In this document: one piece after another, positions 11,033 to 55,311 of the stretch
How the letters are laid out: each line of letters begins with the position of its first letter
How positions within the stretch are numbered: the first letter of the stretch is position 1
IMG/VR virus record: IMGVR_UViG_3300050014_000823
Location: 62,001 to 126,000 of that record
Strand: one strand, 5' to 3'
Length of the DNA: 64,000 nucleotides
Notes under the pieces: generated by a model
Told to the model about the DNA's origin: nothing
The model's database searches: none
Seen by the model: the letters and a program-made list of their open reading frames with translations, nothing else
Made by a program: the position numbers and the translations under genes

Positions 11033-12112
11033 TCATATCAGTTCGTTTTTAATTATTTTCTGTGTACTCCAATGCCCGTGATTATTCTGTACGTGATTTT
11101 TCCGTACATATTTACCACAGACTTTACGAAATTCTGAGTAATGATACTCTCTTGCAAGTCGTACAACATACCGTTCAATTGTTCCGGGGTTGTTCTCCAT
11201 TTTCTTGTTAAGTTCATTAATGAAGTCCATATCCCAAATACCATCATACATAATTGTTGGTGTAACCAATCCCAATAATTCAAACCATTCCTGTGTTTCA
11301 TCCCAATCCAAGCACATGTTTTTCTCATTCCATATACTAAATGCAAGAAAAATTGATTTTAATGCATTGCCATTTGCTTTGGTATAATGTATTGCATGCT
11401 TTGCATACATATTCTCGCCACATAATCTCCAATCTTCCGGAAGTTCGTAACCAATTTGTGCCCATAGATTTTTAACCCAATTTCTTGAAGAATGACTGTC
11501 AGTATCTAATGAACGTGCATGTATGATATCTTTCATCATAGTAGTGTTCTCGCCATCCATTTTTTCCATAATAATTACACGTTGACCTTCGAATATTGAG
11601 ACATCTTCCATCATGCGGTCATCCCTATTCATGCCAGGTGACCAAGGTAGGTGAAAAGTACGATTGTATTTCACCCTATTTGTGAATTGTCCTAATATAT
11701 TACCTTGATTTAATATCTTTTGAACAGAATCATCATTAAAAAGTTCACCTTTTATTCTCGTACCGTTACGTAAAATTTCATTACCCCACTTGTCATATTC
11801 TACGTCTTCATATAAATGTTGTGGTAATACAATTGTTTTAATACCCGCTAATTCTCTGATTCTATCACACGAAAGAATAGTTTGTTCTGCTTCAATATGA
11901 TGAAGTTCGCAAAGCGTTGCCCCGTTATCAATGAAATATCCCTCACCAAATGGTTTAAATAATCTACGTTCAAGTATGTGATGTGCACTTAAATTAACTA
12001 CTTCACCGAATTGGTTGAATTGTGCCTTTTCACCACAAACAATGCATTTGTATCCATCCCTCTTAAGAACAGCATTTCTAAATTCATCCCGTGTTAATTC
12101 GTCTTTCATCAC
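11033..12112 (-). CDS. HNH domain-RNA ligase fusion
   Basis: RDGYKCIVC..AHHILERR..NGATLCELHH; ligase KYNRTFHLPWS, EKMDGEN, GEN, KYVR. Confidence 0.85.
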   Translation of the reverse strand: MMKDELTRDEFRNAVLKRDGYKCIVCGEKAQFNQFGEVVNLSAHHILERRLFKPFGEGYFIDNGATLCELHHIEAEQTILSCDRIRELAGIKTIVLPQHLYEDVEYDKWGNEILRNGTRIKGELFNDDSVQKILNQGNILGQFTNRVKYNRTFHLPWSPGMNRDDRMMEDVSIFEGQRVIIMEKMDGENTTMMKDIIHARSLDTDSHSSRNWVKNLWAQIGYELPEDWRLCGENMYAKHAIHYTKANGNALKSIFLAFSIWNEKNMCLDWDETQEWFELLGLVTPTIMYDGIWDMDFINELNKKMENNPGTIERYVVRLAREYHYSEFRKVCGKYVRKNHVQNNHGHWSTQKIIKNELI

Positions 12113-15652: not shown

Positions 15653-16567
15653 TTATTTAGGTTTTTGCATTATCATACTATAATTATTACCAACAAGTGT
15701 CCCATCAACTGCTCTGAATCCAAGTCTGCTTATGTATTCAAGAAGTTCCATATCAATGTCTACCTCTGTAAGTTGATTGAAGAAGTGAGTATAACCTCTG
15801 CCCTTATTATCCTTTACTCCCCAATATGCTTCATTTTGATTCTGTTTGGTCATGAGGAAACATGAGAATAAGAAGTGACCGCCAGGTTTTAATGCTGAAT
15901 AACCTTGCTTAAAATAATCGAATCGGTCCTTCTGGGAACAATGCTGTAGAACATTTACTGCATAGATTATGTCAAAGTAATTTTCATCCAACAGATAGTC
16001 CGGAATACCACTTTTGTCTATCTCAATAAAGTTTTTATATTTTTTTAATGCCTTTGGTACAGTATAGTCGATACCAATATACTCACATTTGTCATTAATT
16101 TTTTCGAACACATTTCCGTAACCAAAACCGATTTCCAATACTTTTAAAGGTTTAGTGCTTTTCTCAATTCGTTCAAGAAGAAATGGATAGAGTTTCATCA
16201 TTTCACTCATTTGTAGTGTCTGTTCATTGACCTTCTTAATGCTTTTGCTTTCAGCACCACAAATACTAACTAAAGGAAAACTCTGCTTTGCTCTTATCCA
16301 AAATTCCTTATTGTCGATTCTGTTTGGATGAAACCTGTCAACAGCTACGTCCTTCACATATACAACACCTGCATGATTTCCCAAGTCAACCACCCTATCG
16401 TACAATTCTTCCACCATTAGGGTATTAATCATACGAGTGTAACCCTTCGGTACTCCCGGAACTTTCAAATGCACATAGTATTCATTACTTCGAAATTTAA
16501 TGTCATCGAAGAAGTCAAATGAATCTTGAAATGTCATGAACCTATATGCAGCTTTTTCCCTTTTCAT
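15653..16567 (-). CDS. Class I SAM-dependent methyltransferase
   Basis: VLEIGFGYG, YIGID, FDIIYA..VLQH, LKPGG. Confidence 0.85.
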   Translation of the reverse strand: MKREKAAYRFMTFQDSFDFFDDIKFRSNEYYVHLKVPGVPKGYTRMINTLMVEELYDRVVDLGNHAGVVYVKDVAVDRFHPNRIDNKEFWIRAKQSFPLVSICGAESKSIKKVNEQTLQMSEMMKLYPFLLERIEKSTKPLKVLEIGFGYGNVFEKINDKCEYIGIDYTVPKALKKYKNFIEIDKSGIPDYLLDENYFDIIYAVNVLQHCSQKDRFDYFKQGYSALKPGGHFLFSCFLMTKQNQNEAYWGVKDNKGRGYTHFFNQLTEVDIDMELLEYISRLGFRAVDGTLVGNNYSMIMQKPK

Positions 16568-20745: not shown

Positions 20746-21297
20746 TTACTGTATTAAATCGTTAAACCATTCGTAGTTGTCTTGTGACTTATCTCCCGTT
20801 AAATTATCACATCGATAGAACTTCAAATAAAGTTCCAAACTGTCAAGTGCATTTAAATCACTTATAAGTTTTTCTGCACGTCTTTTTGCTTTGTACCAAT
20901 CTTCATGTCTTCCACCTGCGGACCAAGCATTGTATGCATCATCATGCAATAAAATAACTTGAAGTACGTTTGTGTCATGGCAAAATTTTTCTGCAAATTT
21001 TTTGGCTATAAAACCATGATGGTTGTCACCTTGTTTCGGGAGATTCTGATTGACTTTGTTCTTGAACGTGTCGTGTGTTATAGCAATCAGTCTGAGGCTC
21101 GTCCTGTCTTCATCGTCTTTAAAAAACTTGTCGATGTTACCGAGGACTTCCTCGATATGATAAATGACTGCTCCTTCGGGGTGTCCTGGTCTGCTCTTTC
21201 CGTAATTTGCTCCAACAATAAATTCTTCGTCTTCACAAATAGCCAGTTCTACTCCACTCTCAGGTTTTATTATTTCTTTAATTTCTTGTTTATTCAT
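20746..21297 (-). CDS. HD-domain phosphohydrolase
   Basis: HPEG..YH, ITHDTFK, HH, LHDD, D. Confidence 0.8.
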   Translation of the reverse strand: MNKQEIKEIIKPESGVELAICEDEEFIVGANYGKSRPGHPEGAVIYHIEEVLGNIDKFFKDDEDRTSLRLIAITHDTFKNKVNQNLPKQGDNHHGFIAKKFAEKFCHDTNVLQVILLHDDAYNAWSAGGRHEDWYKAKRRAEKLISDLNALDSLELYLKFYRCDNLTGDKSQDNYEWFNDLIQ

Positions 21298-22076
21298 TTT
21301 ATTATTTTTATTAATAATTCTCGTGTAAGGTAAAATCTATTAGCCAATACAATGTTTAAATCAGGATGGTCTTTTTTAAAGCATTCAAATTTCTCCATTG
21401 ACCTTTTATATGTGAAGCCTTTAACTTCAAAAATACAGTCATCAGTAAAAAAATCGGGAGTATATGTACTGCCATCGCTTAGTTTATATGTTGTTTTTTC
21501 ATAATCCCAATCAACATGGCATTTATCCAAGTATTGAGCAAATTTTTCTTCCCATTTTGACCTAAAAATAAACATTCTTCCTTTAACATCAATAAAAGTA
21601 ATTGGTTTAACTTTAGGTGGAAGTTTTCCATACTGACCATTTTTATCACCAGATACTTTTTCTCTGATTGTTTGCTTGGATGCTTCCGTGTGATGCCAAT
21701 CATGTGGTGGTATTCTGTTTTTATTGTATTCACTAACTCCCGGTTTTTTAATTCCTAAATTACCAATTCTTATTTTATTTTTTGTTTCATCACTAACAAT
21801 TCGTCCTTCACGAGATTTACAATTCTTTTCACGATATTCTTCATCTTGCCAACGTAATACAACTGCTTTACCAATTTTATCCTTATGTTCTTGGGATAAT
21901 TTTTTATTTTTGGTTTTTAAAGTCATAGATTCGGACCTGCGTTTTCTTTCACTATCCGATATGCATTGTTTTTTACCTGTTAAATAAATATTTCTACATT
22001 CAATCGAACAACAGTATTTTCCTTGACCGAAATAAGATTCATTACAAACATTACATATTCTATGACTTTTTCCCAT
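21294..22076 (-). CDS. NUMOD3 plus PD-(D/E)XK putative homing endonuclease
   Basis: NUMOD3 repeats; RSKWE..YE..YTPDF..EVKG. Confidence 0.75.
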   Translation of the reverse strand: MGKSHRICNVCNESYFGQGKYCCSIECRNIYLTGKKQCISDSERKRRSESMTLKTKNKKLSQEHKDKIGKAVVLRWQDEEYREKNCKSREGRIVSDETKNKIRIGNLGIKKPGVSEYNKNRIPPHDWHHTEASKQTIREKVSGDKNGQYGKLPPKVKPITFIDVKGRMFIFRSKWEEKFAQYLDKCHVDWDYEKTTYKLSDGSTYTPDFFTDDCIFEVKGFTYKRSMEKFECFKKDHPDLNIVLANRFYLTRELLIKIIK

Positions 22077-22744: not shown

Positions 22745-23221
22745 TTACTTTAATATTTCACGTACTTCCATTAATGCTTTACCTAAGAGGTTCATACCTC
22801 TCCACTGACTTTCATCGAGAACCCTATCGTCTTCCCAATGTAAACCAATTCCCCATATTATATCATAGGGACTTGCCTCAACAATTATCTTATCTTCTGT
22901 TGATTTAAGTAAGGATTTTAAGTCTTTATTTTGGTCGAACTTGGCATAATTAACATCGACCATAGCATCATATCCTGCAGTCAGCCACTCTTTTTGGTCA
23001 AAGTTTTTAACTTTACGACCTAATTTCTTTACAACACTTGGGGTAGGGCAGGCAAGTATCATACTTGCAGATTGACTGTCGTTGAAATACATTGCTTTTT
23101 CCCACATGAATGCCTGTTCACTGTTCTGAAAAATATGCTCTTTGTATTTGAATGTGCATAAGTGCCAATTGGAGAATTCTGAACCCCAAAAGAATACATG
23201 TGTGTCAGTTATTCTTTCCAT
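22745..23221 (-). CDS. NADAR (YbiA-like) family protein
   Basis: FSNW, SEQAFMWEKA, KKLGR, KFDQN, VEASPYDIIWGIG, GMNLLGKALM. Confidence 0.93.
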   Translation of the reverse strand: MERITDTHVFFWGSEFSNWHLCTFKYKEHIFQNSEQAFMWEKAMYFNDSQSASMILACPTPSVVKKLGRKVKNFDQKEWLTAGYDAMVDVNYAKFDQNKDLKSLLKSTEDKIIVEASPYDIIWGIGLHWEDDRVLDESQWRGMNLLGKALMEVREILK

Positions 23222-30411: not shown

Positions 30412-30606
30412 TTAATTAAATGGTGTTTCAAATGGACTGTCAAACGCTCCGTGAGGATGCGGTGGCTTTGGTGGATGTGGCGGGTGTGGTGGATGATGGG
30501 GATGCGACATCATTACAAGACTTATCGTGTTGTCCAACGCTATTCTTGTTATTGTTGGCTTCACGTAGACTTTTTTCTCGCATTTCTTTTTTATGTTCTT
30601 TTTCAT
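30412..30606 (-). CDS. Small peptide with YxKP leader-like motif and His/Pro-rich tail
   Basis: KKVYVKPTITRIALDNTISLVMMS-HPHHPPHPPHPPKPPHPHG. Confidence 0.55.
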   Translation of the reverse strand: MKKNIKKKCEKKVYVKPTITRIALDNTISLVMMSHPHHPPHPPHPPKPPHPHGAFDSPFETPFN

Positions 30607-30948: not shown

Positions 30949-30978
30949 ATTATACGAAATTGTCCCGGAAATGTTACA
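30949..30978 (-). promoter_or_regulatory. Phage promoter motif TGTAAC-N18-TATAAT
   Basis: attatacgaaattgtcccggaaatgttaca. Confidence 0.8.
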
Positions 30979-31759
30979 AATCCGGAACAAAAAAATCAAG
31001 AAATATTTTATCCTGAGTAAAAGTAGGACATTCACTACTTACCCAAACAGTCCTCTGATAGGCTTTTTGTTGCAGTTCTGCTTTAACAAAAGGAGTTTCC
31101 ATTTCACGAACTTCTTTCTTAATAAACCTACCTCTTTTTTGCTGTGGGGTAAAGTCATTCCAGTTGATACCCTTTTGAAATATCATTTCCTGCTGTACGT
31201 TCATGTTCTTGCCGTTGAGTTCTCTGTGGCTGTAAAGTGTCTGAGCAACGCTTGAAATACTGTTGCGAACTGTGTCCTGTTGTCTCCAGATGAAGTAGTT
31301 TTTCACTTCATCGTTTGAAGGAATAGTAAACACCCTTGCATCGAATTCGGCAAGTTTCATATCGGCATAATTAAATCCAATAGTATGTTTTAATTGTCGA
31401 ATTGTTCTTAATTGGTTGAACTTAGCGGTAGCTATACTTGCTGCAACACTGACAACCTTCTGCACGTTACCGTCAAACCAGGCATCAGTACCGATTTCAT
31501 CGAAGTCGGTCATAAGAATACTGATTTCGTCACTCTGAACAAATGCGAATTTAGCACCCTGTATGTTCTTGCAGAGATACATTGCAGCTCCATCCATGTC
31601 AGTCATAAGACCTTCATCGAAAGGTTTTTTCATACCTCTGGTATAAGTGTGAAATGCTTTACCGTCAATACGGATAATGCTATATGACCTACGGGGAAGC
31701 CAAGTCTTTGCTCGGTCCTCATAATAGGATTTCATGCGATTTCCAAGTTCATCAACCAT
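30974..31759 (-). CDS. thg1: tRNA(His) guanylyltransferase Thg1-like protein
   Basis: RIDGKAFH, QSDEIS, FDAR, YFIWRQQD..RNS. Confidence 0.93.
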   Translation of the reverse strand: MVDELGNRMKSYYEDRAKTWLPRRSYSIIRIDGKAFHTYTRGMKKPFDEGLMTDMDGAAMYLCKNIQGAKFAFVQSDEISILMTDFDEIGTDAWFDGNVQKVVSVAASIATAKFNQLRTIRQLKHTIGFNYADMKLAEFDARVFTIPSNDEVKNYFIWRQQDTVRNSISSVAQTLYSHRELNGKNMNVQQEMIFQKGINWNDFTPQQKRGRFIKKEVREMETPFVKAELQQKAYQRTVWVSSECPTFTQDKIFLDFFVPDL

Positions 31760-32289
31760 TTTTCAAAATATTAGTTTATTTTACACGGACACCACTCAGG
31801 TATTGGAGTTTTGTCATGCCATTCAACAAACCCGGCAATTTGACGCTTCGCTTTTTTACATGTCCATTTAAATGGCATTTCAAAGCTATCTGCAGTATAT
31901 ACTCTTTCTGATTCCCAGAAAGGACACTCACTACAGTCTTTAATTTTGATTTTAATTTCAGTTGCCATTGTTTATCAATTTCAGTTTTTCCTGGAGTTCC
32001 TTCTCCATTCTGTCCTTAACTATAAGAGCAAATGTTTCTTTTGAAACACCGTAAAGCGGACACCTTTTAATCTTCTCGAAGTCGATATTACACATACCTC
32101 TTCCGAAGAATTGAGAACTGTAGTCCAAAGGGTCTTCGATTGTTCTACCTGCGCACTTATGCCCATTTATACTGCAGAGGCAATAGTTTTCGCAATCACC
32201 CGAAAGCATGTATTCGTAGTTTTCTTTCGTTAATGCGGGGCATGTTGTCCCGATTTCCGGTACTTCGATTTTCTTCTTTCTCTTTGCCA

Positions 32290-32796
32290 TTATTCGAATA
32301 GATTATATGGTTTATTAACTTTTACTACGCCTACTTTAATATAGTTTTTAATATCAAGTATCTTAGCAACATCTTTTAACTTACAAACAAATACCCGGTC
32401 TTGGTCAAAATCAACTTCTTTAAGTTGATTATCTGCACCGTGATAATTTATTTTTATTCTCGTTAACTTGGGAACAACAAATACAATATATCTTCCCGCA
32501 AGCGAACCTAACTTGTAATATCCTTCGAACCGTTCAATACTAACAGTCAAGTATTCGAGTGTTTTAAAAATATCTTCCATGTTAGAAGGTATTAATATTA
32601 CATTTGCACCACCATGATTAGTGTCTTGAAAAATTGTTGCAGAAGTCTGATTGATTTTCGTACACAATGTTTGATTCCAATCAGTCTGATGCATACTTTC
32701 AGGATACTTACTGTCTTTATATCCTTCATAATCCCATGAAACTAAGGGTATGTGAGTCGATAAAAAGTTTTGTAGTTTACTCATTTTACTCTTCAT
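32290..32796 (-). CDS. Stand-alone fragment resembling the C-terminal half of a T4 gp23-like major capsid protein
   Basis: DWNQTLCTKINQTSATI...GGANVI...IFKTLEY...GSLAGRYIVF. Confidence 0.6.
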   Translation of the reverse strand: MKSKMSKLQNFLSTHIPLVSWDYEGYKDSKYPESMHQTDWNQTLCTKINQTSATIFQDTNHGGANVILIPSNMEDIFKTLEYLTVSIERFEGYYKLGSLAGRYIVFVVPKLTRIKINYHGADNQLKEVDFDQDRVFVCKLKDVAKILDIKNYIKVGVVKVNKPYNLFE

Positions 32797-33829
32797 TTTT
32801 AATCAAGAATTTGTTTGAAATTGCTTTAAAGCTAAGTCTGCCTTGATTTTTAAGTTCGTATCGTACAAATACAACACCCTCACGTTCTGTCTGAGGATTA
32901 AGAGCACTTTTACCTTCTGCGTATGCGAGTATTTCATCAACACTGGCAGGAAGTATGTAATTCCTGTCAAGTATAGGAACTGTCTCAATTTTAAGCGTAT
33001 TGCACAGTTCAATCATTTCTTCGTATGGTAAAAATTCATACCTGTCAATGTCGAACATACGGAAAAACCTTACGGTCTGACCTTTGAGTTTATATTTGTT
33101 CTTCTGAATACCCTCACCAATGATTTCACCCTGCAGACCTAAGTTCCTGCCAAGTACACCAAGTTTTTCCTCAAGAAAGTTCTGACGAGCAAATTTCCAA
33201 AATGAATTACTTGGACTTTCGTAGTATTCCCAATTCCTACCGCAAACACCGAACATACCGTCTTTCCAGAAGAAACTTCCACTGCTACCATCGAGTTTTT
33301 CGGTAGTAACAAATGACTGACCTGCATATTCAACAGGTATATGTGGAAGTATCTGAATACGGTCTTCATCGGTAATCATCATGAATGAAGGAAAACCACC
33401 TTTAGCATCACCCGCAAGTTCTGCAGGGATAGGTGCTTCGTATTTTTCAACACCAAGTTCCTCGCTGACATCAAAACCAACAGGACTGTCAGCTAAGTCA
33501 TGTAAGGTAATTCTTGACCTTTCAAGTTCTTCGATATGCCATTTAGTATTAGCATTGAGTATATCCAACGGAAAACAAATGCCCTGGCTTACTTGCCCTC
33601 TCAAGCGTACTGTTCTGATTCTGTAGTTGTTGTGCTTTAAGAATTCAAATTCCTCACGTTTTGGAACGAGACTATCTATTTCCAGATAGACCACTAATTC
33701 ACCTACATGAAACTGATTTTTCTTAACTACGACTTTCCAGCCAAGAATTTGTGCAACCTCGATTGCTTGTGCATCTGGAATAGGACTAAGATTTAAAATC
33801 CTCTGAATTGTTGCTAATTTTCGTGCCAT
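32786..33829 (-). CDS. RNA ligase (DRB0094/Rnl2-like) with N-terminal OB domain
   Basis: RKLATI..SQG; TDEDRIQ, TEKLDGSS, QGE, REGVV, FKAIS. Confidence 0.92.
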   Translation of the reverse strand: MARKLATIQRILNLSPIPDAQAIEVAQILGWKVVVKKNQFHVGELVVYLEIDSLVPKREEFEFLKHNNYRIRTVRLRGQVSQGICFPLDILNANTKWHIEELERSRITLHDLADSPVGFDVSEELGVEKYEAPIPAELAGDAKGGFPSFMMITDEDRIQILPHIPVEYAGQSFVTTEKLDGSSGSFFWKDGMFGVCGRNWEYYESPSNSFWKFARQNFLEEKLGVLGRNLGLQGEIIGEGIQKNKYKLKGQTVRFFRMFDIDRYEFLPYEEMIELCNTLKIETVPILDRNYILPASVDEILAYAEGKSALNPQTEREGVVFVRYELKNQGRLSFKAISNKFLIKNEE

Positions 33830-34329
33830 TTTATTCTGCTATATAAATGTATGAATCTCTTTCATATTCAAATTTACCACTTTCTTTTGTCGCATCTACT
33901 TGATAATCTTTCACCCGGCTATTATCGGGTTTAACAGGACATTTAACTGCATAATGTATTTGACATCCTGCAATTATTATTTCTCTCTCATTACCGCCAA
34001 TTCTTGCAAACCAATTACTGCTGTTTCTATTGGTTATGACACCCAAGAATTTGTCATCCATTATCACAACTTCTCCCCACGCACTACGATACTGTTTGCC
34101 ATCGGGAGCAATGAACCAATGGTCTGTCGTGATTAAATATTTTCCTGTCATATTCATGGTAATCTCAATATAAATAAACAATCCGATTTATGTATGCCAC
34201 CATAGCAATCACAGTGTTCGCACTTCTTACCCAACGATTGCTTTGCATCTTCTATCGCTATTGCCAATGCAACCCAAGCATCTTCACTGATAGTAACTAC
34301 TTTCTTCTCTTTTTCCATAATAATAAAAT

Positions 34330-34490
34330 TAAAAAACCAGTTCATTTATCCACTGGCAAGTTAGGTTTAGTTGCCAACTTTCCTTTGTGACGGTGCTTCC
34401 TTTATCTGGTATACCAGACCACAAAATTGAGCATGTTATCCGTCATTTCAACACGCAGCTATCGTGTTAGTAATCGAGCGCAAGATAATA
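34330..34490 (-). ncRNA. Putative structured leader RNA ending in an intrinsic terminator
   Basis: Hairpins AACACG/CGTGTT, TGACGG/CCGTCA, TCTGG/CCAGA, TGGCAA/TTGCCA, then CCAGT/ACTGG-TTTTTT. Confidence 0.4.
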
Positions 34491-34532
34491 ATTCGAAAAT
34501 TAATATCCAAGTATTTATATAAAAATTTTCAT

Positions 34533-35360
34533 ATGAAACCAAATTTTAGTGAATCTGAATATCAAAACGCCAAATCAGAAGAATTATTATCTTGTTTATG
34601 TTATTCTTGTAATAACTCATTTAAAACATTTAAAAAAAATATAACCAGAGAATTAAATCACAATATGGAAATAAATAAATTTTGTTCAAAAAAATGTCAA
34701 GGAGTATATTATACTAACAAAAACACTATCAAAACAAAATGTAAATGTTGTAATTCCGAAATGACTATACCATTATCTCAATATAAAAATTCTGAATCGG
34801 GAAATAATTTTTGTTCACGTAGTTGTAACGCAACATATAATAGTCCACAAAGAATTTATAATAGTAGAATCAAAACTAACTGCAAAAATTGTAATAAAGA
34901 AATTAATGTAATATTTTCAGTTCATAAAAAATCAAAATCTGGAAATCATTTTTGTTCACAGTCTTGTGCTGGTACGTATAATAATACGCATAAAACTAAG
35001 GGTAATCGTAGGTCTAAACTTGAAAAATATCTTGAAGAACAATTAATTTTATTATATCCAGATTTGGAGATATTATTTAATGATAAAAATATTATTAATT
35101 CTGAATTAGATATTTATATTTCCGAATTTAAAGTTGCTTTTGAACTTAACGGTATTTTTCATTATGAACCAATATATGGTCAGAAAACATTAGGAAATAT
35201 TCAAAATAATGATAATCGTAAATTTCAAGCATGTTTAGAAAAAAGTATTGAATTATGCATCATAGATACTTCTCAGCAAAAATATTTTAAAGAAGAATCA
35301 TCCCAAAAATATTTGAACATTATTAAAATAATTATTGATAGTAAATTCAAAAAATTTTGA
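34533..35360 (+). CDS. Zinc-ribbon repeat plus Vsr/Hef-like endonuclease
   Basis: CxxC..FCS..C repeats; ELDIY..AFELNGIFHY. Confidence 0.75.
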   Translation: MKPNFSESEYQNAKSEELLSCLCYSCNNSFKTFKKNITRELNHNMEINKFCSKKCQGVYYTNKNTIKTKCKCCNSEMTIPLSQYKNSESGNNFCSRSCNATYNSPQRIYNSRIKTNCKNCNKEINVIFSVHKKSKSGNHFCSQSCAGTYNNTHKTKGNRRSKLEKYLEEQLILLYPDLEILFNDKNIINSELDIYISEFKVAFELNGIFHYEPIYGQKTLGNIQNNDNRKFQACLEKSIELCIIDTSQQKYFKEESSQKYLNIIKIIIDSKFKKF

Positions 35361-39196: not shown

Positions 39197-39961
39197 TTAA
39201 AAATTTATAAATAAGTATTCTCTGAACCATCTGTGAAACATCTTCGGAAGTATCCGCAAGTCTGCAAAACCATAAAGTCCGCAGGAGAAGAAATCATGTG
39301 CCTCTATAATAAAGGTATCGCCTAAATGGTCCACAAATTTATCAGTATCTTTAATCCCGATATCAAGTGTATAGGCGATTGGCGCATTTTCGTCTTTCTC
39401 ATATTTGGCAATCATTTCCATGAGTATTGGCATATACGGGAATAGTGTGAAGTCACCAGCATAATTCTGTAAACCAACGAGTTTTCCCTCATATACGAAT
39501 GCACGCCATTCACTGTCAATATCAATTGTTTCGGAAATCTGATAATTGCCTTCTGGGACATCAATATCGTCATCAACAATCTGACAAAATCCTTTAATTT
39601 GGTCGTTGGATTTTACGAATTTTTTCCCGACAATTTCTTTTTCTGTGCCATTAAATACAAAGCGTTTTGTGTATTTAAAGTCGAGTAATTCTTCCGGGAT
39701 ATTAATGGGTTCAACAGGGTAGCCATAAAAGTGGTTAATGAACTCTGAGACAAACTCTACCGAACCAATTGGCACATAGCCTTTATGAAATTTTTTGAAC
39801 TCTAATTTTGTGAACTTGCCAGAGTAAAACTCTGTATTAATGAACTTATATTTAATTTCTTTGTTGTTGTGAAACCAATTGCAATATTCAATGGCTTCAA
39901 GTAGCGTAAATGCGAAGTCATGTTTGACCTCTTTAAAACATTTTTGTATTAAGAATTTCAT
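39197..39961 (-). CDS. ATP-grasp protein (DUF4343/R2K-like)
   Basis: PIGSVEFV, FVKS, SEWRAFV, TLDIG, IEAHDFFSCGLYG. Confidence 0.8.
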   Translation of the reverse strand: MKFLIQKCFKEVKHDFAFTLLEAIEYCNWFHNNKEIKYKFINTEFYSGKFTKLEFKKFHKGYVPIGSVEFVSEFINHFYGYPVEPINIPEELLDFKYTKRFVFNGTEKEIVGKKFVKSNDQIKGFCQIVDDDIDVPEGNYQISETIDIDSEWRAFVYEGKLVGLQNYAGDFTLFPYMPILMEMIAKYEKDENAPIAYTLDIGIKDTDKFVDHLGDTFIIEAHDFFSCGLYGFADLRILPKMFHRWFREYLFINF

Positions 39962-40000
39962 ATTTGTATAAATTTTATCACACAAATGTAATGATAAATT

Positions 40001-41135: not shown

Positions 41136-41879
41136 TTATGTTTTTAATTTATATTTCCAAATATATTTACCGGATGTTTTTATTCTTCCTTTTAAACAAG
41201 CACAAATGCTGCTTTTATTAATGTTTAATTTTTTTGATGCTTCAATAATGCCATTCCAATTACGTATAAATTTTTCATTTAAGTCATATTGTGAAATTTT
41301 CACTAATATTTGTTTTCTTTGTTTTTCAATTTCTTTTTTTGTTTTCTTTCTTCCTAATTGCGATTTATTGTGTCCACTAATAAATCTTTTTGAAGATGTA
41401 ATCATACAAATGAAAGATTTTTGACAACCACAAACACAAATTCTTTCTTCACGTGGAATATATCGTGGACTATCTTTGCCTGATTTATGATGACAAATGG
41501 GACAATCACAATCTACTTTATGTCCTCTTTCTTCTGTTGTTTGACCAATATGTGCCAATGACATATTCAATTTTGATTTATCCGTATGTTTCACACCTAA
41601 AGGACTACCTGCAATTTTTGCAAAATTAAATGTTGGAGATAAATTGTCAATCCAATACTGTTCTCTTGTAATTAAATTTTCTTTTTTATCTACAACCTCA
41701 ATAATTTCAAAAATAAATGCATCTTCACCATATTTATTCCAAGAATTTTGAATAAATTGATTTTTATGTTTATTTTTTCTCAAAGAACTAATATGACCCC
41801 ATTTTCGATTTTTAAAATTAACTGCTGAACCAATATAGAAGTCATTTGTTATTAAATTGGTTATTTTATAAATTACCAT
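41136..41879 (-). CDS. GIY-YIG homing endonuclease (NUMOD1)
   Basis: VIYKITN..YIGSA..R, REQYWID, C-terminal NUMOD1. Confidence 0.9.
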   Translation of the reverse strand: MVIYKITNLITNDFYIGSAVNFKNRKWGHISSLRKNKHKNQFIQNSWNKYGEDAFIFEIIEVVDKKENLITREQYWIDNLSPTFNFAKIAGSPLGVKHTDKSKLNMSLAHIGQTTEERGHKVDCDCPICHHKSGKDSPRYIPREERICVCGCQKSFICMITSSKRFISGHNKSQLGRKKTKKEIEKQRKQILVKISQYDLNEKFIRNWNGIIEASKKLNINKSSICACLKGRIKTSGKYIWKYKLKT

Positions 41880-43725: not shown

Positions 43726-44613
43726 CTACAAATCCAGTGGATAAAAATTCTTCTTGAAGTTATTTGCAAGTAAATCCCGATACTGTTTATAGTCATCTTT
43801 GCCATTCTGATGCTTCGTCAGAAGAAATGTTAAAACTGCTTGATTTACTTCCTTATCCATTTTCAATTTCGTTCCTGCTGCTGATTTATCACCTAACAAA
43901 TATAGTGCAATTTTCTTACAGAGTTCCAAATCAATGTCCTCAGTAGCAATCTTTTTCACAAAAAGGTCGGTAGGATACCACATTTTATACTTGGCACTGA
44001 TGGTTTCGGCTTTCTTGCCTAACTTGGTCATATGATAGAAACTAATCACTATAATACCATGAGTCTCAGGCACTACGAAGACTGTTGTTGGGTTTAATCC
44101 CATATGAGTATAGCCAACTTGACCAAACCACAATGAAATTTCGAACATCCTGGAAAACAGCCAATTAACGTGATGTTGTGGTAATTTCTGTCCTGTTAAG
44201 GGCACTGCACGGTCTTTCAGATTTATTACGAGTTTGTCTTTTTCTAAGACCATACTTTCTGGCAGGTATCTTTTGAAATTGTCTGACGCTTTGTCATGAA
44301 GTGCCATTAAAGTATTGTAATTATTGACTGATTTAGTCAGCAGCTTACGATTGGCATCAGTCACGACATACTCAATGCGCTTTTCGAATACCTTGAATGG
44401 TCCGGTTTCATCAACATAAGGAGTACCATTTTCGATGACATCCTTATAGTGATTCATAATTGCCATTGCGTTGCTTGCGCCACTAAGACTACAAGCATCT
44501 GGGTGAATTAATTTACTGTAACGCAAATAATCCTTTTTCCAATCATCGGTAGAAAAAATGTCTGAGGGTTTCTTTGACTTAATTAGTTTGTCAACGAGTT
44601 CAACGTCTGTCAT
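43726..44613 (-). CDS. J-domain-like (HPD) plus protein-kinase-fold (pseudokinase) protein
   Basis: YSKLIHPD; WLFSRMFE..GYTHMGLNPTTVFVVPETHG. Confidence 0.65.
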   Translation of the reverse strand: MTDVELVDKLIKSKKPSDIFSTDDWKKDYLRYSKLIHPDACSLSGASNAMAIMNHYKDVIENGTPYVDETGPFKVFEKRIEYVVTDANRKLLTKSVNNYNTLMALHDKASDNFKRYLPESMVLEKDKLVINLKDRAVPLTGQKLPQHHVNWLFSRMFEISLWFGQVGYTHMGLNPTTVFVVPETHGIIVISFYHMTKLGKKAETISAKYKMWYPTDLFVKKIATEDIDLELCKKIALYLLGDKSAAGTKLKMDKEVNQAVLTFLLTKHQNGKDDYKQYRDLLANNFKKNFYPLDL

Positions 44614-45209
44614 TATGTTCGCTTTATTGAGTAGTTAAAAAATCTTTCTATTCTATATACTATATTGGGTGTTAGTCCACTATATGCATCACACTGAAAA
44701 AAGTTATATTGTTGCCAGAGCAACATATCCGAGTCATCGTCAATGATTGCATAACGGCTGAATTCGTGGCTGTGTACACCAAACCATTTTTGACAATTAT
44801 CATCCAGCCATTTGTATATTTCAACACCACGTATTCTTTCATTGCAATATCCGGTTTTATCTATTATTGTAAATGTACCGCCACAATAATTGAATATTTC
44901 CTGTAATTCTTCCGGAGTCCAACCACTTCTCATTGATGCTGAGAGGACTACAGCACTGTTGGTTCTTTCACAAAGTCCATTAAGCATGTCCATACGCATC
45001 GGACACATTTCACCTTTATAGTAATCCCACTTAGAAATTTCCTTTGTCTTAAGCATCTTCCGGAGATATTTCTTCACTGTCTTATAGAAAGGTATACCAC
45101 TATATTGTGTCAAGTGTTTATACCTTTCAGTATAAAATAACTGACAATTCAAAACACCATCAACGTCCAAAAACACCAAATTTTGAAATTTATTAAGTTC
45201 TGGTTCCAT
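44613..45209 (-). CDS. HAD domain protein (RNA-repair 'Swiss army knife' type)
   Basis: FLDVDGVLN, VLSASMR, RGVEI, IIDDDSD, GLT. Confidence 0.8.
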   Translation of the reverse strand: MEPELNKFQNLVFLDVDGVLNCQLFYTERYKHLTQYSGIPFYKTVKKYLRKMLKTKEISKWDYYKGEMCPMRMDMLNGLCERTNSAVVLSASMRSGWTPEELQEIFNYCGGTFTIIDKTGYCNERIRGVEIYKWLDDNCQKWFGVHSHEFSRYAIIDDDSDMLLWQQYNFFQCDAYSGLTPNIVYRIERFFNYSIKRT

Positions 45210-46002
45210 TTTTATATATATTATATTTACGCATTAAATAATATTTAAAATTATTGTCACCATAAATGTAATTTAAAAATTTATCTGCACCTTTATATAG
45301 ATACATTTTCCACACATTTGGCTTATTCTTAGAGACTTTGGTTCTTGACAATTCATTAATACCCATATCGGTCAATAAAATACCAATAAAGTCTAACACT
45401 TCTTTGGTTGAAATGAGACTTATTCGCAACTTTCCTTGATTTCGAAAACCAACTGACCCGTCACCATCAAATAATCCCGCAATAAAATAAGAATAATATT
45501 CTTCATCAATCTTAGGAAATTCCAATGCATTGGTTTTATTTGATGTTATGCCCAAATTAATTAAATGTTCTACAAACAACTCATTACCAATTTGAATTGA
45601 ATATCCGGTATATGTTTTATTGGTTCGCTTATCGAAATTAGTTCTTATGCTAATAGCATGTTCTGCACCAATAGCTTTCTTAAAATTTTCAATAACAATT
45701 AAATCTTTTGATATTAATGAAACTTTATTATTACTTTTCTTAATATTGCCATCCGCACAAATAAATCCAAGCCAATATGCTTTATCCGGAGAATTGATTT
45801 CCTTGAAATAGTCTATACTAAGTGCAAGATGACTCATATTCAATCTACTCTTTTTTTGTTTGGAGATACCGTTTCTCATTAAAATTAATCGAATTCCTGG
45901 TTGAGTTCTTCCGTACTTCAATGCAATTGATTTTTGTGACATTGTTTTGGATAATTCAATAATTTCCATTTCCAATGCTTTAGTTGCAGGTCTTGTTGTC
46001 AT
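45193..46002 (-). CDS. LAGLIDADG homing endonuclease
   Basis: AYWLGFICADG and FIAGLFDGDG. Confidence 0.9.
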   Translation of the reverse strand: MTTRPATKALEMEIIELSKTMSQKSIALKYGRTQPGIRLILMRNGISKQKKSRLNMSHLALSIDYFKEINSPDKAYWLGFICADGNIKKSNNKVSLISKDLIVIENFKKAIGAEHAISIRTNFDKRTNKTYTGYSIQIGNELFVEHLINLGITSNKTNALEFPKIDEEYYSYFIAGLFDGDGSVGFRNQGKLRISLISTKEVLDFIGILLTDMGINELSRTKVSKNKPNVWKMYLYKGADKFLNYIYGDNNFKYYLMRKYNIYKNGTRT

Positions 46003-53533: not shown

Positions 53534-54139
53534 ATGTATATGATTGGAATAAAAGAAGCAGCAGAATTACTTGGAATTACTCCCAAAACATTAAGATTAT
53601 GGGAGAAAAACGGTAAAATAACGAGTCATAGGACTGAAGGTCAACATAGAAGATATGTAGTTTCAGAACTTATCGGTAGTCGTGGAGACAAACTATTAAC
53701 AATTGCTTATGCCAGAGTATCAAGTTATGACCAGAAAGATGATTTAAAACGACAAGAATTGGTATTGGAAAGTTATTGTGCGAGTAAAGGATTTGAATTT
53801 GAATTAATTTCTGATTTAGGTTCTGGAATGAACTACAAGAAAAAAGGACTTATCAGATTAATAAAACTGATTTGCAGTAATCAAATTGATAGATTGGTAA
53901 TCACACATAAAGACAGATTATTGAGATTTGGAAGTGAGTTAATTTTTATGCTTTGCGAAATCTTTGCTGTTGAAGTTTGTATAATTAATAGGAGTGAAGA
54001 TAGCACCTTTGAAGAAGATTTAGCCAACGATGTTTTGGAAATTATAACTGTCTTCAGTGCAAGATTATATGGAAGTCGAAGCCATAAAAATAAACAGATA
54101 ATACAACAATTAAAACAGGTAGCCAAAGATTTGAAATGA
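53534..54139 (+). CDS. tnpA: IS607 transposase
   Basis: YARVSS, DLGSG, HKDRLLRFG, FSARLYGSRS. Confidence 0.95.
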   Translation: MYMIGIKEAAELLGITPKTLRLWEKNGKITSHRTEGQHRRYVVSELIGSRGDKLLTIAYARVSSYDQKDDLKRQELVLESYCASKGFEFELISDLGSGMNYKKKGLIRLIKLICSNQIDRLVITHKDRLLRFGSELIFMLCEIFAVEVCIINRSEDSTFEEDLANDVLEIITVFSARLYGSRSHKNKQIIQQLKQVAKDLK

Positions 54140-55311
54140 AGTCAATTAAGGTAAGATTAGAACTAAACAATAAGCAGACTACACTTGCCAATAAACACGC
54201 AGGAGTGGCAAGATATGCTTATAATTGGGGAAAATCTGTCTGTGATTTGGCAATACAAAATAAGGAGCACAGACCAACAGCAATTGATTTACATAAGAAA
54301 TTTGTTAAAGAAGAAAAAACTATTAAGTCTTGGTTGTATGAAGTATCCAAGTGCAGCCCACAACAAGGTTTAAGAAATTTGGATGAAGCATACAAAAGAA
54401 CATTCAAAGTTAAAAGTAGTCATTTTCCTAAGTTCAAAAAGAAAGGACAACACGATAGTTTTTATCTGGAAGGTGCTATCAAAACTAATAGTAATAAAAT
54501 TAAAGTACCTAAGTTTGGTTGGTTAAGATGTTCAGAAACATTACCAGAATGTGAAGTCAAAAATGTTGTTATAAGTAAAACTGCTAATCAATGGTTTATT
54601 GCTTTTAAAATACCATTTGAACCACAGATTACTAATAAGGTGAATGGTGTTGTCGGTGTTGATTTAGGTATTAAAACACTTGCAGTATTGTCAGATGGTA
54701 AAGTATTTGAAGCAGTTAAACCATATAAACGAAACAAACGGAAATTAAAAATACTACAAAGAAGATTAAGTAAGAAACAGAAAGGTAGCCAAAATAGAAA
54801 AAAAGCCTGTGTGAAGATAGCAAAACTACATTACAGGATAGCAAACATTAGAAAAGATACCACACATAAATTAACAACATATTTAAGTAAAAACCACACT
54901 GAATGTGTTATTGAAGACCTTTGTGTTCGTGGAATGAGTAAAAATCACAAATTAGCATCAGCCATATTGGATGGTGGATTTTCAGAGTTCAGAAGACAAT
55001 TAGAATATAAGTGTCAATGGTATGGTTCAACACTAACAATAGTTGATAGATTTTATCCAAGTTCAAAGACTTGTAGTGGATGTGGTAATGTTAAAAAAGA
55101 ACTAAAATTATCTGAAAGAGAATATGTTTGTGAGAATTGCGGATTGGTGATAGATAGAGACCTAAATGCTGCAATTAATTTAAGAAATAAGTCGGTGAGT
55201 TACACCGAATCAGCCTGTGGAGTGCCTAAACAACTTGATACTTTTGTATCTGGTGGCGCAATGAATCAGGAAGTAAATTGCAATGTTCAACATTGTGTAA
55301 GTTTTACGTAA
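54136..55311 (+). CDS. tnpB: RNA-guided endonuclease TnpB
   Basis: RuvC GVDLG, IEDL, DRDLNAA; zinc finger CSGC..CENC. Confidence 0.95.
   Translation: MKSIKVRLELNNKQTTLANKHAGVARYAYNWGKSVCDLAIQNKEHRPTAIDLHKKFVKEEKTIKSWLYEVSKCSPQQGLRNLDEAYKRTFKVKSSHFPKFKKKGQHDSFYLEGAIKTNSNKIKVPKFGWLRCSETLPECEVKNVVISKTANQWFIAFKIPFEPQITNKVNGVVGVDLGIKTLAVLSDGKVFEAVKPYKRNKRKLKILQRRLSKKQKGSQNRKKACVKIAKLHYRIANIRKDTTHKLTTYLSKNHTECVIEDLCVRGMSKNHKLASAILDGGFSEFRRQLEYKCQWYGSTLTIVDRFYPSSKTCSGCGNVKKELKLSEREYVCENCGLVIDRDLNAAINLRNKSVSYTESACGVPKQLDTFVSGGAMNQEVNCNVQHCVSFT

What the first reader, a model, noticed from the sequence alone, without database searches (positions are those of the whole stretch)
32290..32796. Stand-alone mini major-capsid fragment in the early region: possible decoy
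Seen: 168-aa ORF with WNQTL.TKINQ.SA.I...GGAN.I...IF..LEY...G.LAGRY, which I recognise as resembling the C-terminal (axial domain) part of gp23-like capsid proteins of large phages. It lacks the rest of the fold and is far from structural genes. Established: several defence systems (CapRel, Lit) sense capsid protein. Inference: a capsid mimic that titrates a sensor or modulates assembly.
Basis: partly seen in the sequence, partly recalled or inferred. Interest (0 to 1): 0.65.

Follow-up and report, generated by a model that had tools for sequence, protein, structure and literature searches.

The report
Stand-alone capsid-domain gene beside RNA ligase
A 299-kb peat phage carries a small, well-conserved gene copied from the core-forming end of its own major capsid protein and kept next to RNA-repair genes, so a capsid piece has been put to a new, still untested use, possibly as a mimic of the capsid surface that bacterial immune sensors read.

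Summary
Window 32290-32796 (-) encodes a 168-aa protein. Residues 21-109 are 42% identical (E 9e-20) to residues 385-479 of the phage's own 557-aa gp23-type major capsid protein (MCP), which lies 198 kb away. Profile-profile probability is 99.8%. A confident AF2 model (pLDDT 86) matches only HK97-fold capsid proteins, best T4 gp23 residues 299-521 (Z 10.4): the end of the spine helix, the axial (A) domain and some P-domain strands. The N-arm, E-loop, insertion domain and most of the P domain are missing.

It is not a decaying fragment. There are 23 intact homologues (43-81% identity, full length), and dN/dS is about 0.27 (0.14 on the capsid-like helix). The family has one origin from this lineage's MCP, with a long stem branch followed by slow change.

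It sits in a non-structural block, tightly packed between an RNA ligase (three ligase types across loci) and a Thg1-like enzyme. A complete relative lacks both the ligase and the mini-gene.

The function is untested. My best guess (about 0.3) is a mimic of the capsomer-forming A-domain surface that works against capsid-sensing defences. Rivals are an RNA-repair accessory and a capsid-assembly accessory. I found no described precedent.

The parts
32290..32796 (-). Mini-capsid gene: a 168-aa stand-alone paralogue of the C-terminal third of the phage's own gp23-type MCP. An alternative start ATG lies at 32784.
   Evidence: ORF; 42% identity, E 9e-20 to own MCP aa 385-479; 23 full-length homologues; AF2 pLDDT 86; fold hits are all HK97-fold MCPs, best T4 gp23 Z 10.4; dN/dS 0.27.
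32431..32745 (-). aa 18-122: the part whose capsid origin is detectable by sequence. It runs from the last turn of the spine helix through the long A-domain helix, the GGAN turn, the short helix and the G-R-Y loop strands.
   Evidence: hhalign A1 vs A2: 99.8%, E 4e-29, mini 18-122 to MCP 382-492.
32602..32688 (-). aa 37-65: the QxDWNQTLxTKINQTSAxI helix plus the GGAN turn. It is the most constrained segment and is nearly identical in the MCP family and the mini family.
   Evidence: 20 of the 26 positions that are at least 90% conserved and identical in both families lie here (16 in aa 37-55, plus GGAN 62-65); pooled dN/dS 0.14; the MCP segment 385-479 is also the best-conserved part of the MCP (78% vs 58% identity).
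32488..32496 (-). G101-R102-Y103 loop. R102 is invariant and aligns with MCP R472 and T4 gp23 K420.
   Evidence: Alignment chain; the K420R gp24-bypass mutation lies at the intracapsomer interface in the A domain (PMC9546572); invariance.
32786..33829 (-). RNA ligase (N-terminal PHA02142 OB domain plus RNA_ligase nucleotidyltransferase). Its last 11 nt overlap the start of the mini-gene.
   Evidence: Pfam 1.8e-32 and 5.8e-22; phrog_968 8.8e-74; an RNA ligase lies upstream of the mini-gene in 11 of 13 distinct loci for which DNA was held (directly in 9, with one ORF between in L097 and L098), and in a further context known from its gene table only; three ligase types.
31958..32290 (-). 110-aa Cys-rich ORF. 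Its ATG overlaps the mini-gene stop (TAATG). It has homologues in the same position in three other loci.
   Evidence: orf110 in WIN, L006, L112; a 107-aa ORF in the P0009 contig; no Pfam or PHROG match.
31771..31968 (-). 65-aa CxxC-containing ORF (phrog_29585), downstream of the mini-gene in 8 distinct loci.
   Evidence: 1.5e-15.
30974..31759 (-). Thg1-like 3'-5' nucleotidyltransferase (repair of tRNA 5' ends), the downstream end of the conserved gene string.
   Evidence: Pfam Thg1 1e-26; phrog_4717 5.3e-82; found downstream of the mini-gene in WIN, L089, L090, L091/L113, L096, L097 and L098.
33831..34181 (-). 116-aa conserved ORF of unknown function (phrog_22562), upstream of the ligase. It forms the upstream edge of the syntenic string.
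   Evidence: 9.9e-36; orf116up in WIN, L006, L089.

Best explanation
What it is (shown, about 0.95). The gene is a domesticated partial duplicate of this phage lineage's own gp23-type major capsid gene. Only the C-terminal third was kept: the last turns of the spine helix, the whole axial (A) domain and a few P-domain strands. These are compacted into a 168-aa soluble protein that cannot build a shell, because it has no N-arm, E-loop, insertion domain or most of the P domain. After one duplication it diverged quickly, and it has since evolved slowly under purifying selection. It is packed with almost no spacing, and is therefore probably co-transcribed, between an RNA ligase and a Thg1-like tRNA-repair enzyme in a non-structural block of replication, nucleotide-metabolism and RNA-repair genes.

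How it most likely works (inferred, about 0.3). It is a molecular mimic of the capsomer-forming face of the MCP A domain. The long DWNQTL..KINQ.SA.I helix, the GGAN turn and the G-R-Y loop are held almost unchanged in both the MCP and the mini-protein, while about half of the other MCP-conserved positions have been released. Made together with the non-structural genes, the mini-protein would occupy a host protein that recognises that face of monomeric MCP, for example an Avs7/8/10-type sensor. Because it lacks the rest of the fold, it would not supply the full surface needed to switch the sensor on. It would therefore blunt capsid-triggered abortive defence, while the neighbouring ligase and Thg1 repair the tRNA damage such defences cause. 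Binding to any host protein, the timing of expression and the lack of activation are all inferred and none is shown.
For: Identity and fold:
- (E 9e-20; hhalign 99.8%).
- (pLDDT 86; only HK97-fold or Gp23 hits; T4 gp23 299-521, Z 10.4; Atlas TM 0.67 to clusters that are 100% PF07068).

Functional, not decaying:
- 23 intact full-length homologues.
- Pairwise dN/dS 0.13-0.33, like the neighbouring Thg1 gene.
- Pooled dN/dS 0.27: 0.14 on aa 37-65 and 0.19 on the family-specific termini.

Origin:
- Rooted tree: minis monophyletic at 100/100; minis plus this lineage's MCPs group at 100/100 against three outgroup gp23-type MCPs; stem branch 3.15 substitutions per site.
- No other MCP piece in the genome.

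Selective retention of one surface:
- Of 64 MCP positions that are at least 90% conserved in the aligned region, 26 are identical and conserved in the minis. Sixteen of these lie in aa 37-55, and the rest include GGAN and G97/G101/R102/V105/P109. Another 35 positions are relaxed.
- Invariant polar residues Q42, T46, N49 and Q50, with A53, fall on the helix face opposite the hydrophobic stripe W40-L44-I48-I55. This is my own helical-wheel reasoning on the sequence.
- R102 aligns with T4 K420, an intracapsomer-interface residue (PMC9546572).

Target class exists:
- MCPs also trigger CapRel, Thoeris and other systems.

Context:
- The block is non-structural: HAD-SAK, R2K ATP-grasp, DNA ligase, RNA ligase, Thg1, DHFR, NUDIX, PIF1-type helicase, NADAR.
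- Such RNA-repair genes in gp23-type jumbo phages are read as conflict genes (PMC7824862).
- The mini-gene is dispensable for this capsid type: the complete 345-kb relative G001 has the MCP but no mini-gene.
Against: - No binding partner was identified.
- There are no expression or timing data: no RNA runs hold the locus, and promoter scans were uninformative.
- The host and its defences are unknown (peat metagenome).
- A fragment that carries the sensed epitope might activate a sensor rather than block it.
- The conserved helix residues might simply be needed for the A-domain fold.
- The very tight and recurrent linkage to an RNA ligase, with co-absence of both genes in G001, is explained at least as directly by a role in RNA ligation or repair.
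- The termini, including the mini-specific invariant residues H15, P17, C138 and G156, are as constrained as the capsid-like part. That suggests a function beyond mimicry.
- No published precedent for a capsid-fragment decoy was found.
Confidence: 0.3

Rival explanations
1. RNA-repair accessory. The capsid A-domain scaffold was exapted as a partner of the adjacent RNA ligase, or of the ligase/Thg1 tRNA-repair pathway. It might act as a substrate adaptor, an activator or a regulator, much as Archease assists RtcB (my own knowledge, an analogy only). Under this reading the retained capsid residues are only fold determinants.
For: - An RNA ligase lies upstream, with overlapping or abutting stop and start codons, in 11 of 13 distinct loci for which DNA was held (directly in 9).
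- The linkage persists across three ligase types. It also persists when a homing endonuclease (L097) or an extra ORF (L098) has been inserted.
- A Thg1-like gene lies downstream in 7 loci.
- The complete relative G001 keeps HAD-SAK, DNA ligase and Thg1 but lacks both the RNA ligase and the mini-gene.
- Family-specific termini with invariant H15, P17, C138 and G156 are under strong constraint.
Against: - No capsid-fold domain is known in RNA repair.
- Net charge is not conserved (pI 5.1-9.1), which argues against generic RNA binding.
- Mini-proteins that are 70-81% identical sit next to non-orthologous ligase types (pN about 0.5 between types). That is awkward for a co-evolved physical complex.
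- The strongest constraint lies on the residues shared with the MCP.
- L008 has a mini-gene without a ligase or Thg1 nearby.
- The second RNA ligase in the genome has no mini-like neighbour.
Confidence: 0.25
2. Capsid-assembly accessory. The mini-protein docks on the MCP through the native A-domain to A-domain (penton/hexon-forming) contact. It could shield or chaperone MCP monomers, bias the choice between pentamers and hexamers, or cap capsomers.
For: - It retains the A-domain helix and the G-R-Y loop, whose T4 counterpart K420 sits at the intracapsomer interface and controls pentamer formation.
- The genome has only one full-length Gp23-family gene, so no gp24-like vertex paralogue was detected.
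Against: - The gene is in a non-structural operon 198 kb from the MCP.
- The complete relative G001 has a 54-60% identical MCP and no mini-gene, so the mini-protein is not needed for this capsid type.
- The co-fold of MCP with the mini-protein gave no verdict, which is not evidence either way.
- About half of the MCP-conserved positions are relaxed in the mini family.
Confidence: 0.13
3. Weapon against other phages. An MCP fragment made ahead of the late genes acts as a dominant-negative poison of capsid assembly by related co-infecting phages. The phage's own MCP would be resistant. This resembles capsid-derived restriction factors such as Fv1 in mammals (my own knowledge, an analogy only).
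For: - It retains the capsomer-interface elements that are near-invariant across the whole MCP clade.
- It is confined to a sub-clade.
- It lies in a non-structural block.
Against: - The retained surface is identical in the phage's own MCP, so there is no evident basis for self-resistance.
- There is no direct evidence.
Confidence: 0.07
4. Non-functional leftover: a fragment of a second capsid gene, or a by-product of recombination near homing endonucleases, drifting neutrally.
For: - Homing endonuclease genes are frequent around the locus, so ectopic duplication is plausible as the origin.
Against: - There are 24 distinct intact proteins of 156-185 aa at 43-81% identity.
- dN/dS is 0.13-0.33.
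- Synteny is conserved.
- The predicted fold is confident and compact.
Confidence: 0.02

Closest known systems
T4 gp23 / Pfam PF07068 (Gp23-type HK97-fold major capsid protein), including this phage's own MCP
   Same: Homologous in sequence (42% identity to own MCP aa 385-479; hhalign 99.8%) and in predicted structure (T4 gp23 299-521, Z 10.4). The A-domain helix, the GGAN turn and the G-R-Y loop are conserved.
   Different: It is only 168 aa. It has no N-arm, E-loop, insertion domain, most of the spine helix or most of the P domain, so it cannot form a shell. It lies in a non-structural operon. Its Pfam score is below the gathering cut-off. The N-terminal 17 and C-terminal 46 residues have no detectable sequence similarity to the MCP.
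T4 gp24 vertex protein (a full-length MCP paralogue)
   Same: It is also the product of a capsid-gene duplication followed by specialisation. The mini-protein model also aligns to it (1yue, Z 8.3).
   Different: gp24 keeps the whole fold and is a structural component of the vertices. The mini-protein is a partial copy with no evidence of a structural role.
Targets of capsid-sensing defence proteins (Avs7/Avs8/Avs10, Dsr1; also CapRel, Lit, Thoeris)
   Same: The mini-protein carries the part of the MCP (the penton/hexon-forming A-domain region) that Avs7, Avs8 and Avs10 are reported to bind on monomeric MCP.
   Different: No interaction was tested and the host is unknown. Lit and CapRel are described as detecting MCP through short sequence motifs; from my own recall, unchecked here, T4's Gol peptide lies N-terminal to the region copied here. 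No phage-encoded capsid decoy has been described in the papers I could search.
Phage anti-defence proteins that work by mimicry or sequestration (Ocr-type DNA mimics, Tad/Acb sponges, TifA)
   Same: The proposed logic is the same: a small phage protein occupies a host defence component.
   Different: Those proteins mimic DNA, bind signalling nucleotides or bind toxins. None is derived from the phage's own structural protein.
Pyrococcus furiosus PF0899 (PDB 2pk8), a 94-aa stand-alone protein
   Same: It is the only non-capsid entry among the top structural matches (Z 7.3, 88 of 94 residues aligned to model 36-162). This shows that an A-domain-like alpha/beta unit can exist on its own.
   Different: There is no detectable sequence relationship, its function is unknown, and the Z score is in the range the tool warns may reflect only a common arrangement.
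Satellite-encoded capsid redirectors (P4 Sid, SaPI CpmB, PLE TcaP)
   Same: They are small accessory proteins that act on HK97-fold capsid assembly, which makes them a model for the assembly-accessory rival.
   Different: They are not derived from the MCP, are encoded by satellites, and bind capsid exteriors or act as scaffolds.

Membership tests
Gp23-type major capsid protein family (PF07068) | Statistically significant sequence homology to family members | tested here: met
   E 9e-20 to own MCP; hhalign 99.8%, E 4e-29; 21 of 24 family members hit PF07068 on their own, best E 1.1e-6.
Gp23-type major capsid protein family (PF07068) | Score above Pfam's curated gathering cut-off (24.4 bits) | tested here: not met
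   17.4 bits, E 0.0031, covering only profile positions 220-296 of 376.
Gp23-type major capsid protein family (PF07068) | Complete HK97 fold (N-arm, E-loop, P domain with spine helix, A domain) able to form capsomers | tested here: not met
   168 aa; the model aligns only to gp23 299-521, gp24 207-422 and HK97 gp5 216-383; no complementary fragment exists in the genome.
Gp23-type major capsid protein family (PF07068) | Virion shell component encoded in the structural or late module | tested here: not met
   The gene context is non-structural. Virion composition itself cannot be tested here.
Stand-alone HK97 A-domain derivative (descriptive class) | Predicted fold superimposes on the A domain (plus adjoining strands) of solved MCPs over most of its length | tested here: met
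   131 of 168 residues aligned to T4 gp23, Z 10.4, rmsd 3.8; P1 MCP Z 9.8; 48 of the top 50 rows are HK97-fold capsid or encapsulin shell proteins; the exceptions are the uncharacterised PF0899 (2pk8) and BB3626 (3bjq); Foldseek top hits are all MCPs; Atlas TM 0.67.
Pseudogene or decaying fragment | Neutral evolution (dN/dS near 1), disrupted frames, patchy conservation | tested here: not met
   dN/dS 0.13-0.33, pooled 0.27; 24 intact homologues.
Anti-defence decoy or mimic of a capsid-sensor ligand | Binds a host sensor of the MCP without activating it, and rescues phage from that defence | not testable with these tools
   The host and its defence repertoire are unknown. There is only circumstantial support.
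Anti-defence decoy or mimic of a capsid-sensor ligand | Expressed before or independently of the late structural genes | tested here: inconclusive
   Gene content of the block suggests pre-late expression. There are no RNA runs and no discriminating promoter motif.
Capsid-assembly accessory that binds the MCP | Physical interaction with the MCP | tested here: inconclusive
   The co-fold of MCP and mini-protein scored 0.00 and was returned as 'no answer'.
RNA-ligase accessory subunit | Conserved gene linkage with the ligase | tested here: met
   A ligase lies upstream in 11 of 13 distinct loci for which DNA was held, directly in 9; three ligase types; both genes absent from G001.
RNA-ligase accessory subunit | Physical or functional interaction with the ligase or RNA | not tested
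pI is not conserved.

The most novel reading that the evidence does not exclude
Some jumbo phages have turned the core-forming domain of their own capsid protein into a stand-alone immune antagonist. In this reading it is a self-derived decoy that occupies bacterial pattern-recognition receptors (Avs7/8/10-like or others) that read the A-domain interface of monomeric capsid protein. It would be inherited as one cassette with RNA ligase and Thg1 tRNA-repair enzymes that undo the damage those defences cause. This would be the first counter-defence protein known to be built by copying the very epitope that the host senses.
Probability: 0.25. Interest if true: 0.9.

Novelty: new variant of a known kind. 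Interest (0 to 1): 0.62.

Why it matters
Major capsid proteins are among the commonest triggers of bacterial anti-phage immunity. Phages cannot easily mutate the surfaces that build capsomers. A phage gene that reproduces only that surface, is kept under purifying selection, and lies outside the structural module is a concrete candidate for one way phages might cope with such sensing.

Whatever the function turns out to be, this is a clean case of a viral shell protein being partly duplicated and given a new role: one origin, a burst of change, then constraint. Its persistent linkage to RNA ligases of three types gives a testable lead on phage RNA-repair cassettes.

The family is absent from 50,697 deposited phage genomes and is known only from metagenomes. 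It is easily overlooked, being annotated at best as a weak Gp23 hit.

Tried and rejected
- Co-fold of the mini-protein with its own MCP (complex prediction): score 0.00, returned as 'no answer'. It is not evidence for or against binding.
- Profile of the family against PDB sequences: only noise (E at least 0.3). T4 gp23 is too distant for sequence alone, and the link came from structure.
- Language-model look-alike search: scores at or below 0.90 with few shared features, so uninformative.
- Sigma-70 promoter and terminator scan: counts equal the shuffled expectation.
- T4-type late-promoter motif TATAAATA across the whole genome: not enriched at structural genes and absent upstream of the MCP, so it gives no handle on timing.
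- Sequencing runs: only DNA runs from peat and sediment, none on record as RNA.
- Single-sequence scan of IMG/VR: nothing found. The alignment-based scan returned mostly full-length MCP genes, and only L009 was a true mini-gene. The metagenome scan added few new loci.
- Literature searches for a capsid decoy or a truncated MCP paralogue, and for PF0899 (which hit only Pfam-number look-alikes): no precedent found.
- A first tree included a mis-extracted ORF (L080). I dropped it and rebuilt the tree with outgroups.
- Programmed frameshift fusion of the ligase and the mini-protein: considered and rejected, because the junction geometry differs among loci (11-nt overlap, 4-nt overlap, 1-nt overlap, 1-nt gap).
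- The large representative-protein search was not run, because the protein was not left open and the operators flagged its cost.
Full report
**1. The observation**

The window is part of a 299,144-bp IMG/VR virus record (window = C1:62001-126000, CheckV completeness 91%). The DNA is held in peat metagenome runs. The start overlaps the last 11 nt of the upstream gene. A second ATG (M5, at 32784) lies two bases after that gene's stop. The ORF's own stop overlaps the next start (TAATG).

**2. It is a copy of part of the phage's own capsid gene**

- Pfam Gp23 matches weakly on its own (E 0.003, 17.4 bits against a cut-off of 24.4; aa 40-109 to profile 220-296 of 376).
- tblastn against 50,697 deposited phage genomes finds no full-length homologue. 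It finds only weak hits, and the five in annotated records fall on annotated major capsid genes (the sixth record, LR756508, has no annotation).
- In the phage's own genome, the one full-length Gp23-family gene (C1:292205-293875, 557 aa, Pfam E 2.9e-64) matches the mini-protein at 42-43% identity: aa 21-109 to 385-479, E 9e-20.
- Nothing else in the genome resembles any part of the MCP. This is therefore a stand-alone domain gene and not one half of a broken second capsid gene.
- Alignments of 24 mini-proteins (A1) and 17 MCPs (A2) compare at 99.8% probability, E 4e-29, mini 18-122 to MCP 382-492.

**3. Which part of the capsid protein**

- AlphaFold2 with the family alignment gives a confident model (pLDDT 86, pTM 0.82). 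It has a short helix, a 27-residue helix, a short helix and a run of beta-strands.
- Foldseek against the PDB returns HK97-fold capsid proteins in its first 29 rows (phage P1, T4 gp23 and gp24, lambda gpE, and others).
- The exhaustive VIA search puts T4 gp23 first (Z 10.4, rmsd 3.8, 131 residues, model 1-163 to gp23 299-521). Next come the P1 MCP (Z 9.8) and gp24 (207-422, Z 8.3). HK97 gp5 aligns over 216-383.
- BFVD and the ESM Atlas again return Gp23 proteins: BFVD's ten best matches that carry a name are capsid or head-vertex proteins, and both Atlas clusters are 100% PF07068 (TM 0.67, 139 residues).
- Published landmarks for gp23 place residues 292-307 in the spine helix, 381, 387 and 420 in the A domain, 455 in the P-domain sheet and 486-502 in the A-P linker (PMC9546572).
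- On those landmarks, the mini-protein starts at the end of the spine helix and contains the whole axial domain plus adjoining P-domain strands. It lacks the N-arm, E-loop, insertion domain and most of the P domain.

**4. It is a functional gene family**

- A word-indexed search of 5.8 billion proteins found 23 other proteins of 156-185 aa. They are 43-81% identical and cover the whole length.
- Invariant residues occur in the capsid-like part (W21, W40, N41, T43, K47-Q50, A53, I55, G62, G63, G97, G101, R102, P109). They also occur in the family-specific ends (L8, L12, H15, P17, C138, G156).
- Nei-Gojobori dN/dS for unsaturated pairs is 0.13-0.33. The adjacent RNA ligase gives 0.07-0.13 and Thg1 gives 0.09-0.25.
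- Pooled over 26 pairs, dN/dS is 0.27 overall, 0.14 for aa 37-65 and 0.19 for the termini. Neutral decay is excluded.

**5. Origin**

[quoted passage not shown] It was rooted with the MCPs of Microcystis phage Mel-JY01, Flavobacterium phage immuto and an uncultured 484-kb phage.

- The mini-proteins are monophyletic (100/100).
- They group with this lineage's own MCP clade (100/100) to the exclusion of the outgroups.
- The stem branch is 3.15 substitutions per site, while most branches inside the family are 0.03-0.4.
- This points to one duplication of this lineage's MCP, a burst of divergence, and then conservation. Whether the minis nest inside the MCP clade or sit beside it is unresolved.
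- The gene is confined to a sub-clade. A complete 345-kb relative with terminal repeats (G001) has the MCP but no mini-gene.

**6. What was kept and what was released**

- MCP segment 385-479 is the best-conserved part of the MCP (78% identity against 58% over the full length).
- Of 64 MCP positions that are at least 90% conserved within the aligned 105 columns, 26 are conserved and identical in the mini family, 35 are relaxed and 3 are switched.
- The retained positions cluster. Sixteen lie in aa 37-55 (QxDWNQTLxTKINQTSAxI). The others are GGAN 62-65, L80 and Y82, G97, G101, R102, V105 and P109, plus W21 and G25 at the N-terminal end of the aligned region.
- On a helical wheel (my own reasoning from the sequence), W40, L44, I48 and I55 form the hydrophobic stripe. 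Q42, T46, N49, Q50 and A53 lie on the opposite face and are invariant or nearly so in both families. That pattern fits a conserved contact surface better than a buried core.
- Chaining the HMMER alignment of the MCP to T4 gp23* with the BLAST alignment gives three correspondences: T4 N381 to MCP E436 to mini N72; A387 to D442 to K78; K420 to R472 to R102.
- These three T4 residues are the sites of the gp24-bypass mutations and lie at the interface between neighbouring subunits in the capsomer (PMC9546572). R102 is invariant.

**7. Context**

- The gene lies in a long co-directional block with no structural genes among the ORFs scanned. The block holds HAD 'Swiss-army-knife RNA repair' domain, adenylosuccinate synthetase, R2K ATP-grasp, DNA ligase, RNA ligase, the mini-gene, Thg1-like, DHFR, NUDIX, a PIF1-type helicase, NADAR and HD genes, with homing endonucleases scattered through it.
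- In 11 of the 13 distinct mini-gene loci for which DNA was held, an RNA ligase lies upstream (directly in 9), with stop and start overlapping or abutting. A further context, seen only as a gene table (the P0009 contig), has the same ligase-to-mini order.
- The ligase comes in three types: 347 aa with an OB domain, 287 aa, and a 337-aa type. The linkage survives insertion of an endonuclease VII gene (L097) or an extra ORF (L098).
- A 65-aa CxxC ORF follows in 8 distinct loci and Thg1 in 7.
- G001, which lacks the mini-gene, keeps HAD-SAK, DNA ligase and Thg1 but also lacks the adjacent RNA ligase.
- Thg1 and RNA ligases in gp23-type jumbo phages are interpreted as repair of tRNA damaged in host-phage conflict (PMC7824862).

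**8. Mechanism**

Nothing here measures function. Three readings fit the data.

(a) Mimic of the A-domain capsomer-forming surface acting on a host MCP-binding protein.
- MCPs also trigger CapRel (which attacks tRNA 3' ends), Thoeris and other systems.
- A fragment that offers only that surface could compete with the MCP without providing the full surface these sensors envelop.
- A cassette that pairs such a mimic with tRNA-repair enzymes would also explain the synteny.

(b) An accessory of the RNA ligase or of tRNA repair. This is the most direct reading of the linkage. It is weakened by non-conserved charge (pI 5.1-9.1), by very similar mini-proteins sitting beside non-orthologous ligases, and by the strongest constraint lying on MCP-shared residues.

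(c) A capsid-assembly accessory. This is weakened by the gene's location and by its absence from G001.

I rank (a) at about 0.3, (b) at about 0.25 and (c) at about 0.13. Inter-phage interference gets about 0.07 and a neutral remnant about 0.02. The remainder is for something not yet imagined. The co-fold of MCP and mini-protein returned no verdict.

**9. Novelty**

The fold and the parent family are well known, and full-length MCP paralogues such as gp24 are known. I found no description of a conserved family consisting only of the A-domain end of an MCP, under purifying selection and embedded in an RNA-repair operon. It was absent from the papers I could search, from Pfam and PHROGs as a family of its own, and from deposited phage genomes. 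I therefore file it as a new variant of a known kind, with function open.

Noticed in passing
window 11033-12112 (-): A second, different RNA ligase (359 aa, phrog_24030, E 3.5e-125) whose N-terminal stretch resembles HNH endonucleases. The phage therefore carries at least two RNA ligases, and only one is paired with the mini-capsid gene.
   Followed up: partly
window 54136-55311 (+) and 56194-57327 (+): Two ORFs that match phrog_506 'transposase' (E 1e-116 and 4e-27). They lie close together on the plus strand after the strand switch at about 46 kb.
   Followed up: no
window 30412-30606 (-): A 64-aa ORF with a His/Pro-rich tract (HPHHPPHPPHPPKPPHPH) just downstream of the Thg1-like gene, with overlapping ORFs on both strands. 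It is unclear whether it is a real gene.
   Followed up: no
window 34464-35360 (+): A lone plus-strand 298-aa ORF inside the minus-strand block. It has repeated Cys-rich units (weak zf-FCS hit) and may be a mobile endonuclease-type insertion.
   Followed up: no
window 9412-10440 (-), 21294-22076 (-), 41136-41879 (-), 45193-46002 (-): Four homing-endonuclease-like genes (GIY-YIG, endonuclease I/NUMOD3, GIY-YIG/NUMOD1, LAGLIDADG) in 37 kb. Related loci carry endonuclease VII, GIY-YIG or LAGLIDADG genes at different points around the ligase/mini/Thg1 string. In L097 an endonuclease VII gene sits between a ligase remnant and the mini-gene.
   Followed up: partly
window 22745-23221 (-), 44613-45209 (-), 39197-39985 (-), 15653-16567 (-): NADAR, HAD-SAK (RNA-repair-type HAD), R2K ATP-grasp and tRNA-methyltransferase-like genes. 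Together with the ligases and Thg1, they suggest an unusually rich repertoire for RNA repair and ADP-ribose processing.
   Followed up: no
G000:C1 whole genome (MCP at 292205-293875): Only one full-length Gp23-family gene is detectable, so there is no separate gp24-like vertex paralogue. The MCP natively has Arg at the position where T4's K420R mutation lets gp23 build pentamers.
   Followed up: partly
mini-protein aa 15, 17, 138, 148, 151, 156 (window about 32329-32754): The mini family has invariant or near-invariant residues with no MCP counterpart (H15, P17, C138, D148, N151, G156). Whether His, Cys and Asp come together in space could not be checked, because model coordinates are not exposed.
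   Followed up: no
L089 8075-10425; L091 4987-6924; L097 2671-4614: Related phages carry a PRPP-synthetase-like gene plus a NAMPT pair (NAD salvage), or an FtsH-like AAA/M41 protease, a few kb downstream of the mini-gene. The window's phage has neither at the equivalent place.
   Followed up: no
window ~46000: GC skew and AT skew change sign at about 46 kb and again at about 62 kb, coinciding with switches in coding strand.
   Followed up: no
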